40,167 nt of DNA from Prasinococcaceae sp. CCMP 1430 (lineage: Eukaryota; Plantae; Prasinodermophyta). Location: NCBI GenBank assembly GCA_013416795.1, contig RQSC01000033.1, positions 357,006 through 397,172 on the forward strand. Reading direction: 5' to 3'. This document shows, piece by piece, positions 117 through 2,657 of this stretch (position 1 is its first letter; each line of letters starts with the position of its first letter). The notes under the pieces were generated by a model, which saw only the letters and a list, made by a program, of their open reading frames with translations, was not told the origin of the DNA and ran no database searches. A program made the position numbers and the translations under genes.

Positions 117-148
117 CCGACCGACCGACCGACCGACCGACCGACCGA
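117..148 (+). repeat. (CCGA)8 tetranucleotide microsatellite
   Basis: Eight contiguous CCGA units read directly from the sequence. Confidence 0.95.
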
Positions 149-491
149 CACACAGATTTTTCCCCCGTCTCGCTGTGCCGCGAGGGCGTTTCCCGCCCTC
201 GTCGCAATGCACAGCCGCGCGCGCGGAGCAGAGCGGCGCGAGCGCACGAGCGGCGGCGGCGGCGCACCCCTTCGGCGCTCCGGCGGGGCGGCGGGGCCGT
301 CTTTCTCTCGCGCTCGCGCCCCGCCTGAATGAGAATGCGAATGGGGGATCGAGAGCGGCGTGTGGAACGCGGCCGCGCGGAATCTCCCCTGGCTGGCTGG
401 CCGGTGGATGGGTTGTCGGTGGGCCGGCCGGTCGCCGCGCTGAGCTGGCGCCGAGCGCGCGCGCGCGCCACGAGGGACTGTATGGAGAGCA

Positions 492-616
492 GCCGACCTG
501 CGACGCCGCCTGACGCCCGCGCCCCGCCAGCCGGACCTGTTCGGATGAGGGTCGCGCGGCTGGCCTCCGAGACCGATTTCGACGGCTGGCGCGCCGCCGC
601 GCGGCGCCTGCGCGCG
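492..616 (+). other. Bacterial-like operon junction fragment: C-terminus of a putative DNA modification/repair radical SAM protein (ADLRRRLTPAPRQPDLFG*) overlapping the N-terminus of a DUF4130/UdgX-associated protein (MRVARLASETDFDGWRAAARRLRA)
   Basis: Frame 492-548 ends in a QxxLF-type tail and TGA; ATG 545-547 overlaps it as ATGA (bacterial translational coupling). The peptide resembles, from memory, alphaproteobacterial TIGR03915/UdgX-fusion N-termini. Both genes are truncated. Confidence 0.6.
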
Positions 617-815
617 AGCCGAGGCGCCTGCGGCGCGCGGAGGGTTGTGCGGAGGCGGAACGAGGGGCGCGCGAAGGCGCGGAGGGAAGGAAGGGGGAAC
701 AGGGGGCATTGCCGCGCCCCGGCGGTGGGGGGGGGCGGCAGGTGTGGCGCAGGGGGGCATTGAGCGCGCCGCTCTTTCCTTCGCGGGGGACCAGGGGAGG
801 GGGCTTGCAGCAGCC

Positions 816-2657
816 ATGGACGGCGGCGGCCTCAGCCATGGGCCGCTGGGCACATTCCAAGCCTCGCAGACTACGGGCACCATCCTGTGCTGCATCTGTG
901 GCGTAGGCATGCCGCCTAACCCGACCAACATGTGCGTGAACTGCGTCCGCACCCAGGTGGATATCACAAAGGACATACCACGTCGCTGCACGGTCATCTA
1001 CTGCTCGACGTGCGGCAAGTACCTGCAGCCGCCCAAGCATTGGCTGCGCGCAGAGCTCGAGTCCAAGGAGCTGCTCACGTTTTGCGTGAAGCGCCTGAAG
1101 GGCCTCAACAAGGTCAAGCTCGTCGATGCGGGCTTCATCTGGACTGAGCCGCACAGCAAGCAGCTCAAGGTGAAGGTCACCGTGCAGGACGAGGTGCTCA
1201 ACGGAGCTATCCTGCAGCAGAGCTGCGTGGTGGACTACACGGTGGTGTACAACATGTGCGGCGAGTGCATCCGTGCCAACGCAAACCCTGACCAGTGGGT
1301 TGCGAGCGTGCAGGTGCGCCAGAAAGTGAGCCACAAGCGCACCTTCCTGTTCTTGGAGCAGCTCATCCTCAAGCACGGCGCCGACAAGCACACCATCAAC
1401 GTCAAGGACAACGCCGATGGACTAGACTTCTTCTTCAAGTCCAAGTCGCACGCGCTCTCCTTCGTCGACTTCCTCACGCAAGTCGCGCCCGTCAAGCAGG
1501 GCAAGGACTCCAAGGAGCTCGTGTCGCACGACGAGCACACCTCGAACTACCGCTACAAGTTCACGTTCTACTGCGAAATTGCGCACCCGTGCAAGGACGA
1601 CCTGGTTGTCTTCGACCGACGGCAGAGCCGCGCGCTGGGCGGCTTCGGGCCGCTCGCGCTCGTCACGCGCGTTTCCAACAACCTGCTCTTCACTGACCCG
1701 AGCTCGCTGCGCCAGGTGTGGCTCGACGCTACTCAATACTGGCGCTCGCCCATCGCGGTCATTCAGGATTCCAAGCAGCTCGTTGAGTACCTCGTGCTTG
1801 ACATCGAGTGCGTGCGCGGAGACTACGGCAGACCCATCGCTAACGGCCCGTACGTGCTCGCCGATGCGGAGGTGGTGAAGGTGCGCGCGCGGGGGCAACG
1901 CGCGCGCGCGAGCGCACACGCGCGAGCACACTCGCGCGGGCTCGCGCCTGCGTGCCCCACCGCGCGGTGTCGACGCTGACAGAATTGCATTTCGCCACGC
2001 GTTGCGTAGGTGAGCGAGTTCGGGCACACCGACGGCACCATGCACGTGCGCACGTTGCTGGGCTCAGTGCTCAAGCCGGGCGACACGGCGCTTGGTTATG
2101 ACCTGCAGTCAGCGAACTACAACACCGCCGAGGTCGACTCGTACGGCGGCTCGATCGACCTGCCTGACGTGGTTCTCGTGCGCAAGAGCTACGCCGAGAA
2201 GAGGCGGCGGAGGAAGAACAGGGCGAGGCCGTGGCAGCTCAAGCAGCTGGGCAACAAGGGGCAGATGGATACCGACGAGGACGCACATGGTGACGGTGCT
2301 GAGGGCGCCAAGAACAAGTCGAAATCGAGCAGGCGGCAGGGTGCTGCCGAGGCGGCGATGGAGGAGCAGCGGCAGCGCGACATGGAGCGCTTCATGGAGG
2401 AGCTCGAGGAGGACCCCGAGTTGCGCTCCCGCATCAATCTGTACCGCCGCTCGGAGGGCCACGCAGGTGGCGCGAGCGGTGCGGGCGGCGCAGTCGACGA
2501 CGACGACTACGACGATGAGAGTGATGGCGATGGCGTCCCCGAGGTGCCGCTCGAGGAGCTGCTTGACTCGCTCACAGCGCTCAATGTGAGCGACGCAAGC
2601 GGAGGCGGGGGTGGGCCTGCGCCTAGTGGCGCAGGCCCTGGTGACATGGACATGTGA
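816..2657 (+). CDS. NMD3: 60S ribosomal export adaptor NMD3; exons 816-1880, 2010-2657 (570 aa)
   Basis: ILCCICG..PNPTNMCVNC, CSTCGKYLQPPKHW, ESKELLTFC, FIWTEPHSKQLKVK, WVASVQVRQKVSHKRTFLFLEQLILKH. GT..AG intron 1881-2009 with GCTGAC branch joins in phase 0. Confidence 0.96.

What the first reader, a model, noticed from the sequence alone, without database searches (positions are those of the whole stretch)
489..616. About 125 bp of a bacterial DNA-repair operon junction embedded in algal intergenic DNA
Seen: one frame ends ADLRRRLTPAPRQPDLFG-TGA and a second starts at the overlapping ATGA with MRVARLASETDFDGWRAAARRLRA; both stop making sense within a few codons, near (CG)n runs. Known: ATGA overlaps mark bacterial translational coupling, and TIGR03916 radical SAM genes are typically followed by TIGR03915/DUF4130(-UdgX) genes. 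QxxLF tails are clamp-binding-like. Inference: Caulobacteraceae-like origin, either a micro-scale horizontal insertion or a contaminant read stitched in at GC repeats (the length is near a read length).
Basis: partly seen in the sequence, partly recalled or inferred. Interest (0 to 1): 0.75.

Follow-up and report, generated by a model that had tools for sequence, protein, structure and literature searches.

The report
Bacterial DNA scrap in algal promoter
A 125-base scrap of DNA from a Caulobacter-family bacterium (the end of one DNA-repair gene and the start of the next) sits 201 bases upstream of the NMD3 gene of the marine green alga Prasinoderma coloniale; it is either a fresh scar of foreign DNA captured by the alga or an assembly fault, and only raw reads can decide.

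Summary
Window 489-548 encodes ...AADLRRRLTPAPRQPDLFG-stop. An ATG at 545 overlaps that stop (ATGA) and opens MRVARLASETDFDGWRAAARRLRA.

Both peptides match, in the same order and spacing, the junction between a TIGR03916 radical SAM gene and a TIGR03915-UdgX fusion gene. The match was found in Novosphingobium and in 36 loci that are mostly Caulobacterales. A DNA profile of 24 such loci hits the 40-kb window once, without gaps, at 491-615 (E 9e-22). With the 26 bases used to find those loci masked, E is still 4e-6 to 2e-5.

Best DNA identity is only 78-79% (Caulobacter and Phenylobacterium genomes), so the donor species is unsampled. Differences fall mostly at third codon positions, so there is no visible decay since transfer.

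The host is Prasinoderma coloniale CCMP1413, and the piece ends 201 bp before the NMD3 ATG. It carries no functional gene.

The published assembly is long-read based, which favours a real insertion (about 0.55 against 0.33).

The scan has noted similar bacterial scraps at other loci of this genome. One was followed up (s1-399960) with the same open question.

The parts
489..548 (+). Last 19 codons plus the TGA stop of a bacterial TIGR03916-type radical SAM gene. The tail ...ADLRRRLTPAPRQPDLFG* carries a beta-clamp-like QxDLF motif.
   Evidence: Translation. It aligns co-linearly with the tails of verified TIGR03916 genes. nhmmer on the left part alone gives E 3.8e-6.
545..615 (+). First 24 codons of a bacterial TIGR03915 (DUF4130)-UdgX fusion gene, MRVARLASETDFDGWRAAARRLRA.
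   Evidence: Identity is 21-22 of 24 aa to Phenylobacterium and Caulobacter proteins. Family membership of those proteins was verified.
545..548 (+). ATGA stop/start overlap of the two bacterial genes.
   Evidence: Relatives have TGATG at the same place.
491..615 (+). Full extent of detectable bacterial homology: 125 nt, gap-free, 79% GC.
   Evidence: nhmmer alignment, blastn ranges, MAFFT alignment and GC content.
463..476 (.). (CG)7 run in the left flank.
477..490 (.). 14-nt spacer of 50% GC (ACTGTATGGAGAGC) between the CG run and the piece. Its origin is unknown: it could be filler or host sequence.
   Evidence: It shows no homology to the conserved bacterial sequence that precedes the piece in relatives.
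600..632 (.). The last 13 nt of the piece (600-612) recur 12/13 at 620-632 in the right flank. AGCCGA occurs at 491-496 and again at 614-619. These may be microhomologies.
   Evidence: (D3). My rough chance estimate is about 0.1 for each, so the evidence is weak.
816..1883 (+). Exon 1 of host NMD3 (60S export adaptor). Its ATG lies 201 nt downstream of the piece.
   Evidence: It is identical to Prasinoderma coloniale PRCOL_00004482 / UniRef100_A0A7R9TN85 up to the splice site.

Best explanation
The stretch 491-615 is a 125-nt piece of chromosomal DNA from an unsampled member of the Caulobacteraceae. It covers the last 18-19 codons of a TIGR03916 radical SAM gene and the first 24 codons of the adjacent TIGR03915-UdgX gene.

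I read it as physically present in the nuclear genome of the sequenced P. coloniale CCMP1413 clone. The most likely route is capture of free bacterial DNA as filler during end-joining or microhomology-mediated repair of a double-strand break in the very GC-rich NMD3 promoter or 5' leader.

It encodes nothing functional: about 4% of one gene, about 5% of the other, and no bacterial expression context. It is passenger DNA. At most it adds an upstream ATG (545, a 72-codon uORF) if it lies within the NMD3 5' UTR.

Shown: bacterial origin, family identity, sharp borders, lack of decay, and host identity. Inferred: physical presence in the alga and the repair-capture route.
For: Bacterial origin and family.

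Divergence from the nearest relatives lies mainly at third codon positions (for example 2/2/6 by codon position for L014), and both frames are intact. So the sequence was under bacterial selection until recently.

Host is P. coloniale CCMP1413. Its published assembly is PacBio Sequel, NextDenovo, Arrow and NextPolish from a single-cell-derived axenic clone (PMC7455551). As I understand that pipeline, it gives no obvious way for one short contaminant read to be spliced into a consensus.

The donor is at most 79% identical to any of 185,579 species representatives and to the JGI/TARA contigs that carry the motif. That is not what I would expect from a common, well-sequenced laboratory contaminant.

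The left junction is not inside a low-complexity k-mer. A unique 14-nt spacer separates it from the CG run.

Lead only, not tested here: the scan lists about ten other short bacterial fragments near 5' ends of genes in this genome. One of them was reported absent from wild copies (s1-399960).
Against: 125 nt is within the range of short-read lengths. The flanks are GC-rich and repetitive, with a 12/13 repeat across the right junction.

I could not confirm that the window comes from the long-read assembly rather than another assembly of the same strain.

The nearest relatives are freshwater or soil Caulobacter and Phenylobacterium, which are also typical water and reagent contaminants (my own knowledge). 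The alga is an open-ocean species.

The authors screened contigs for bacterial contamination, so bacterial DNA may have been present in the preparation.
Confidence: 0.55

Rival explanations
1. Assembly or polishing chimera. The 125 nt come from bacterial DNA in the sequencing libraries (culture associate or water/reagent contaminant). They were written into the consensus at a poorly covered, extremely GC-rich spot during correction, polishing or gap filling. The alga's real genome lacks them.
For: The length is close to a short-read length. The flanks are 72-77% GC with a (CG)7 run and a 12/13 repeat across the right junction. The nearest relatives belong to genera known as water and reagent contaminants (plus my own knowledge). 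The piece shows no decay. The genome paper included a step to remove bacterial contigs. In this region the wild ORF P0001 already differs from the reference by an indel in a G-run, which shows the region is error-prone or variable.
Against: As I understand these tools, long-read overlap assembly with Arrow and NextPolish does not insert 125-nt blocks from short reads. Other fragments noted in this genome are up to about 700 nt, longer than any short read (unchecked). The left join is at a unique 14-nt spacer rather than in a shared k-mer. The donor is not a well-sequenced contaminant species (at most 79% identity).
Confidence: 0.33
2. Older natural insertion shared by wild P. coloniale populations. 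This would be a relic of a larger horizontally acquired block, of which only 125 nt are still recognisable.
For: P. coloniale carries many bacterial-type genes (PMC7455551; scan notes). With only 125 nt and no exact donor, up to a few per cent of neutral decay would go unnoticed. Some blastn alignments run on weakly to about 631-637.
Against: The borders are sharp against strongly conserved bacterial flanks. No other part of the operon is present anywhere in the 40-kb window. Both frames are intact with GC3 of 16/19 and 23/24. The substitution pattern is dominated by third codon positions.
Confidence: 0.1
3. Chance resemblance of GC-rich algal DNA to Ala/Arg-rich bacterial proteins.
For: Short-peptide HMM scans found nothing. 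GC-rich DNA gives many weak blastn hits to bacteria.
Against: Two adjacent genes match in the correct order, spacing and frames. The profile E-value is 9e-22, and 4e-6 without the ascertained bases. It is the only hit in 80 kb of search space.
Confidence: 0.01

Closest known systems
TIGR03916 radical SAM / TIGR03915(DUF4130)-UdgX two-gene cassette of Alphaproteobacteria (for example Phenylobacterium L014 3899-6570, Caulobacter L007, Novosphingobium L001)
   Same: Same gene order, same stop/start junction and same tail motif (Q-x-x-L-F). The N-terminus is 21-22 of 24 aa identical. DNA identity is 75-79% over 100-140 nt.
   Different: Only 125 nt of a roughly 2.7-kb cassette are present. There is no radical SAM core, no DUF4130 body and no UdgX domain. 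The overlap is ATGA with an extra Gly, where relatives have TGATG. The piece sits in a eukaryotic promoter.
Filler-DNA or captured-DNA insertions at repaired double-strand breaks (NUMTs/NUPTs, mtDNA or cDNA capture in yeast, extraneous DNA at transformation junctions in Chlamydomonas and plants) - comparison from my own knowledge
   Same: A short, non-functional, sharply bordered foreign fragment in non-coding DNA, with possible short microhomologies at the junctions.
   Different: The donor is a free-living bacterium rather than an organelle or the cell's own nucleic acids. The empty site is unknown, so deletion or duplication at the target cannot be scored.
Bacterial sequence embedded in eukaryotic assemblies through contamination (chimeric contigs)
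   Same: An undecayed bacterial segment of about read length in a GC-rich, hard-to-sequence region.
   Different: It is embedded within continuous algal sequence in what is reported to be a long-read assembly of an axenic clone. The donor is not a known sequenced contaminant.
332-nt Sphingomonas ohr/ohrR fragment upstream of cyclin C in the same genome (scan note s1-399960)
   Same: Same genome and same kind of object: a gene-junction fragment of a GC-rich alphaproteobacterium just upstream of a housekeeping gene. It carries the same unresolved question.
   Different: Different donor family, different length and different locus. That case had wild copies for comparison and this one did not. 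I did not re-test that note.

Membership tests
TIGR03916 (putative DNA modification/repair radical SAM protein) | Radical SAM core and full-length match to the NCBIfam model above cut-off | tested here: not met
   The window peptide gives no NCBIfam or Pfam hit. Only 19 codons are present, and nhmmer finds no other part of the gene in the window. It is a fragment of a member's gene, not a member gene.
TIGR03916 (putative DNA modification/repair radical SAM protein) | C-terminal tail ...DLR..(F/L).P.P.Q(L/P)xLF-stop, directly abutting the next gene | tested here: met
   The tail aligns with 36 bacterial tails. The upstream ORFs were verified as TIGR03916 in L001 (560 bits) and L014 (550 bits).
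TIGR03915 / PF13566 (DUF4130) fused to UdgX (TIGR03914) | N-terminal M-x-V-x-L-x-S/A-E-x-DFDGWR-x-AAR motif at residues 1-24 | tested here: met
   Identity is 88% to P0136 and 21-22 of 24 aa to Phenylobacterium and Caulobacter. The downstream ORFs were verified as TIGR03915 plus TIGR03914.
TIGR03915 / PF13566 (DUF4130) fused to UdgX (TIGR03914) | DUF4130 body and UdgX uracil-DNA-binding domain | tested here: not met
   Homology ends at 615. The conserved V-L-W-T-V-D-G block that follows in relatives is absent. There are no Pfam or NCBIfam hits for the 144-aa ORF 329-763.
Beta-clamp-binding pentapeptide (QL[SD]LF consensus, my own knowledge) | Q-L-[S/D]-L-F at or near the C-terminus | tested here: inconclusive
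   Bacterial tails end in QLSLF, QLELF or QPSLF. The window has QPDLF followed by G and stop. Binding was not testable, and it is irrelevant in the alga.
Captured foreign DNA at a repaired break (real insertion) | Foreign origin with sharp borders inside host sequence | tested here: met
   Host NMD3 lies 201 nt downstream.
Captured foreign DNA at a repaired break (real insertion) | Reads or independent assemblies spanning both junctions, and an empty-site allele in relatives | not testable with these tools
Protein-level and pattern searches for wild copies of the upstream region found nothing.
Assembly chimera | No genuine reads spanning the junctions, with a coverage or quality drop at the borders | not testable with these tools

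The most novel reading that the evidence does not exclude
P. coloniale really does pick up short scraps of DNA from neighbouring GC-rich bacteria and paste them into breaks near gene starts. This NMD3-upstream piece would be one of a dozen or more fresh, lineage-specific events in strain CCMP1413. That would show the raw, mostly useless first step of bacterium-to-alga gene transfer caught in the act, in the alga that defines a third phylum of green plants.
Probability: 0.4. Interest if true: 0.8.

Novelty: new member of a known kind. Interest (0 to 1): 0.55.

Why it matters
If the piece is real, it is a clean example of non-functional bacterial DNA entering an algal nucleus: donor family identified, borders known to within a few bases, no selection involved. 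Together with the other fragments noted in this genome, it would allow the rate, size spectrum, site preference and junction chemistry of bacterium-to-eukaryote DNA transfer to be measured directly. At present these are inferred only from the rare genes that survive.

If it is an artefact, then the reference genome of a phylum-defining alga contains embedded bacterial chimeras. According to other scan notes, some lie inside gene models. Those would contaminate HGT inferences, gene models and databases, and should be flagged.

Either result is useful. Public reads that could test it are reported (PMC7455551, PMC11884799).

Tried and rejected
1. NCBIfam and Pfam scans of the two short peptides and of ORF 329-763 gave nothing relevant. 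The peptides are too short, and the models hardly cover the extreme tail and head. This does not count against homology.
2. tblastn of the 20-aa tail against plasmids found no match. blastn in 'distant' mode against plasmids returned only GC-rich noise.
This was the planned decisive comparison.
4. Exact look-up of seven candidate ORFs overlapping the piece found none in the protein collection. The search for homologous proteins with the minus-strand ORF 59-814 gave no hits. So there is no protein-level trace of the upstream region from other assemblies.
5. Pattern scans for the 5' end of the NMD3 coding sequence found nothing in JGI/TARA metagenome contigs or in IMG/VR.
6. Searches for a closer donor did not get above 79% identity: genome contigs (30 loci) and metagenome contigs (10 loci).
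7. Megablast of window 1-25000 against plasmids found no further high-identity bacterial segment. A six-frame motif scan for ABC-transporter motifs found none in the window.
8. I considered extending the homology to about 635, as some blastn alignments do. I rejected it as GC-rich low complexity, because nhmmer stops at 615 and the conserved VLWTVDG block is missing.
9. A literature search found no report of embedded bacterial fragments or chimeras in the P. coloniale genome.

Full report
**1. The observation**

One frame ends AADLRRRLTPAPRQPDLFG followed by TGA at 546-548. An ATG at 545-547 overlaps that stop (ATGA) and opens MRVARLASETDFDGWRAAARRLRA. Upstream of 489 and downstream of about 616 both frames turn into GC-rich nonsense.

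**2. Is it bacterial, and what is it?**

Short-peptide HMM scans were blank. tblastn of the 25-aa N-terminal peptide against 72,556 plasmids and chromids gave a single hit, on a 1.8-Mb Novosphingobium replicon (68% identity, E 0.04). Reading that locus showed the following:
- The matching ATG starts a 476-aa protein.
- Three bases upstream, another gene ends ...RADLRALVAPPATQLELFAA-stop.

So both window peptides have counterparts there, in the same order and abutting each other. NCBIfam identifies the upstream gene as TIGR03916, a putative DNA modification/repair radical SAM protein (560 bits). It identifies the downstream gene as a TIGR03915 (DUF4130) plus TIGR03914 (UdgX) fusion.

An unbiased phmmer search of 1.84 billion representative proteins with the 32-aa window peptide gave two relevant hits:
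- P0136, a soil metagenome fragment, 88% identical over residues 1-25 and starting at its own N-terminus, E 4.7e-5.
- P0137, 78% identical.

The other two hits were long repetitive proteins.

A wobble-degenerate pattern for SETDFDGWR found 30 loci among 185,579 species genomes. Two are unrelated chance matches (L023, L027). The other 28 carry the same operon junction. They come overwhelmingly from Caulobacterales (Phenylobacterium, Caulobacter, Brevundimonas, Henriciella, Algimonas, Peiella); the rest are one Mesorhizobium and a few genomes without a lineage name. All 28 show the same anatomy: a tail ending ...Q-L-S-L-F-stop, then TGATG, then M-x-V-V-R-L-A-S-E-T-D-F-D-G-W-R. For Phenylobacterium L014 the two genes were confirmed as TIGR03916 and TIGR03915-UdgX, and for Caulobacter L007 the downstream gene was confirmed as TIGR03915-UdgX.

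**3. Extent and significance**

A DNA profile built from 24 of these loci (400 nt either side of the junction) was searched against the whole 40-kb window on both strands. It gave one significant hit: 491-615 against profile columns 344-468, gap-free, E 9e-22. The next best hit had E 0.97.

Those loci had been found with a 26-nt pattern taken from the window, so I repeated the search in two ways. With those 26 nt masked the result was E 1.8e-5. With everything from 566 onward removed it was E 3.8e-6, still co-linear. The match of the upstream gene's tail is therefore independent evidence.

The multiple alignment shows that the strongly conserved bacterial sequence on either side is absent from the window. 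On the left that is ...AAGCCCTTCGTC..GACTGGAGCCC..., and on the right GTGCTCTGGACCGTCGATGG. The piece is thus 125 nt (plus or minus 3) with sharp borders, and nothing else of the operon is in the window.

**4. Donor**

Best DNA identities are 78-79% over 100-116 nt: Caulobacter L007, Phenylobacterium L014 and metagenome L039. Other Phenylobacterium/Caulobacteraceae loci reach 72-77% over up to 158 nt. Marine Hyphomonadaceae align only around the ascertained motif.

A second scan of JGI/TARA metagenome contigs found 10 further loci, none closer. The donor is therefore a Caulobacteraceae lineage that is not among the species representatives.

Differences from the nearest relatives lie mainly at third codon positions (for example 2/2/6 outside the ascertained bases for L014). 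Amino-acid identity is 21-22 of 24, both frames are intact, and GC3 is 16/19 and 23/24. So the divergence arose under bacterial purifying selection, and no decay since transfer is visible. With 125 nt and no exact donor, a few per cent of decay could hide.

**5. Host and context**

The ORF that starts at 816 is NMD3. Its exon 1 is identical to Prasinoderma coloniale PRCOL_00004482 / UniRef100_A0A7R9TN85. Environmental variants with 1-3 amino-acid differences exist in ENA, Logan and TARA data.

The piece ends 201 nt before the NMD3 ATG. It lies in a 72-79% GC region, 14 nt to the right of a (CG)7 run.

The published genome of strain CCMP1413 was made from a single-cell-derived axenic clone with PacBio Sequel reads, NextDenovo, Arrow and NextPolish. 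Contigs were screened against nr for bacterial contamination (PMC7455551). I could not verify that the window comes from that assembly rather than another assembly of the strain.

**6. Real insertion or chimera?**

This is the only open question, and I could not close it. The planned test was to fetch the wild contigs that encode P0001 and P0140-P0142 and look at their upstream DNA. The substitutes all came back empty:
- Exact look-ups of ORFs overlapping the piece.
- A homology search with the long minus-strand ORF.
- Pattern scans for the NMD3 5' end in metagenome and viral contigs.

*For a real insertion:*
- As I understand the pipeline, a long-read consensus has no obvious route for splicing in one short contaminant read.
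- The left junction is at a unique 14-nt spacer of 50% GC, not inside a shared low-complexity k-mer.
- The donor is not a well-sequenced contaminant species.
- By my own arithmetic, a rate of about 1e-6 such events per genome per generation would give dozens of lineage-specific insertions over the divergence I assume between wild strains (about 1%). With a mutation-accumulation span of the order of 10,000 generations (my estimate from the ranges given in PMC11884799), about 0.01 such events would be expected there. So that experiment does not argue against it.

*For an artefact:*
- The length is in the short-read range.
- The surroundings are GC-rich and repetitive, with a 12/13 repeat of the piece's last 13 nt 20 nt further on.
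- The nearest relatives are freshwater or soil genera that are also classic water contaminants (my own knowledge), while the alga is oceanic.
- The region is error-prone or variable. The wild ORF P0001 implies an indel of about 10 nt in the G-run at about 725-745.

*My estimates:* real insertion 0.55, chimera 0.33, older shared relic 0.10, chance 0.01.

**7. Function**

The piece holds about 4-5% of each gene and none of the catalytic parts, so it cannot work as a bacterial gene. Its only conceivable effect in the alga is on the NMD3 promoter or leader. If transcribed, the ATG at 545 opens a 72-codon upstream ORF. This is inference and was not tested.

**8. Relation to other notes of this scan**

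The scan's first readers flagged about ten other short bacterial gene fragments (77-726 nt) at or near the 5' ends of genes in this genome. One was followed up: a 332-nt Sphingomonas ohr/ohrR piece upstream of cyclin C, reported absent from five wild copies and left open between break-repair capture and assembly fault (s1-399960).

I did not re-test these notes. They are leads, but they suggest a genome-wide pattern that deserves a census. No paper found here reports such fragments in P. coloniale.

**9. Verdict**

The object is a new example of a known kind of thing: either foreign DNA embedded in a eukaryotic chromosome or an embedded contaminant. Its interest depends on the read-level test, for which suitable reads are reported in the two papers cited above.

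Noticed in passing
window 709-815 (G-run / GT tract at about 725-745): The wild ENA protein P0001 starts at the TTG equivalent to window 709 and reads MPRPGGVCVGRGAAGVAQGG... in frame into NMD3. This implies an indel of about 10 nt relative to the window in the G-run. It is either natural variation or a homopolymer error in the reference.
   Followed up: partly
window 1893-1895: All four environmental NMD3 exon-1 read-through ORFs that reach this residue (P0001, P0140-P0142) have Arg where the window has Gln (ORF residue 360). The site lies in the intron-1 read-through. It is a reference-specific base.
   Followed up: no
L014, L018, L029 and about 30 other bacterial loci (C-termini of TIGR03916 genes): TIGR03916 radical SAM proteins of Caulobacterales end in Q-L-S-L-F or close variants, most often QLSLF itself, which is the canonical beta-sliding-clamp-binding pentapeptide. 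This suggests the uncharacterised radical SAM/UdgX repair cassette is recruited to the replisome. Two Phenylobacterium loci (L006, L009) have QPSLF, like the window's QPDLF.
   Followed up: partly
P0137 (37 aa, ENA contig of 780 nt): This is another truncated DUF4130 N-terminus. MRAATLASETDFDGWRKAARALR runs into unrelated sequence after 23 residues. It may be a contig-end effect or a second chimeric junction elsewhere.
   Followed up: no
window 117-148: A (CGAC)8 microsatellite lies in the far upstream region.
   Followed up: no
L033, L037 (TARA contigs) and L029 (Caulobacteraceae bacterium UBA3198): Phenylobacterium-like Caulobacteraceae carrying the same cassette occur in TARA Oceans assemblies. 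So relatives of the donor are at least present in marine data sets, whether as true residents or as contaminants.
   Followed up: no
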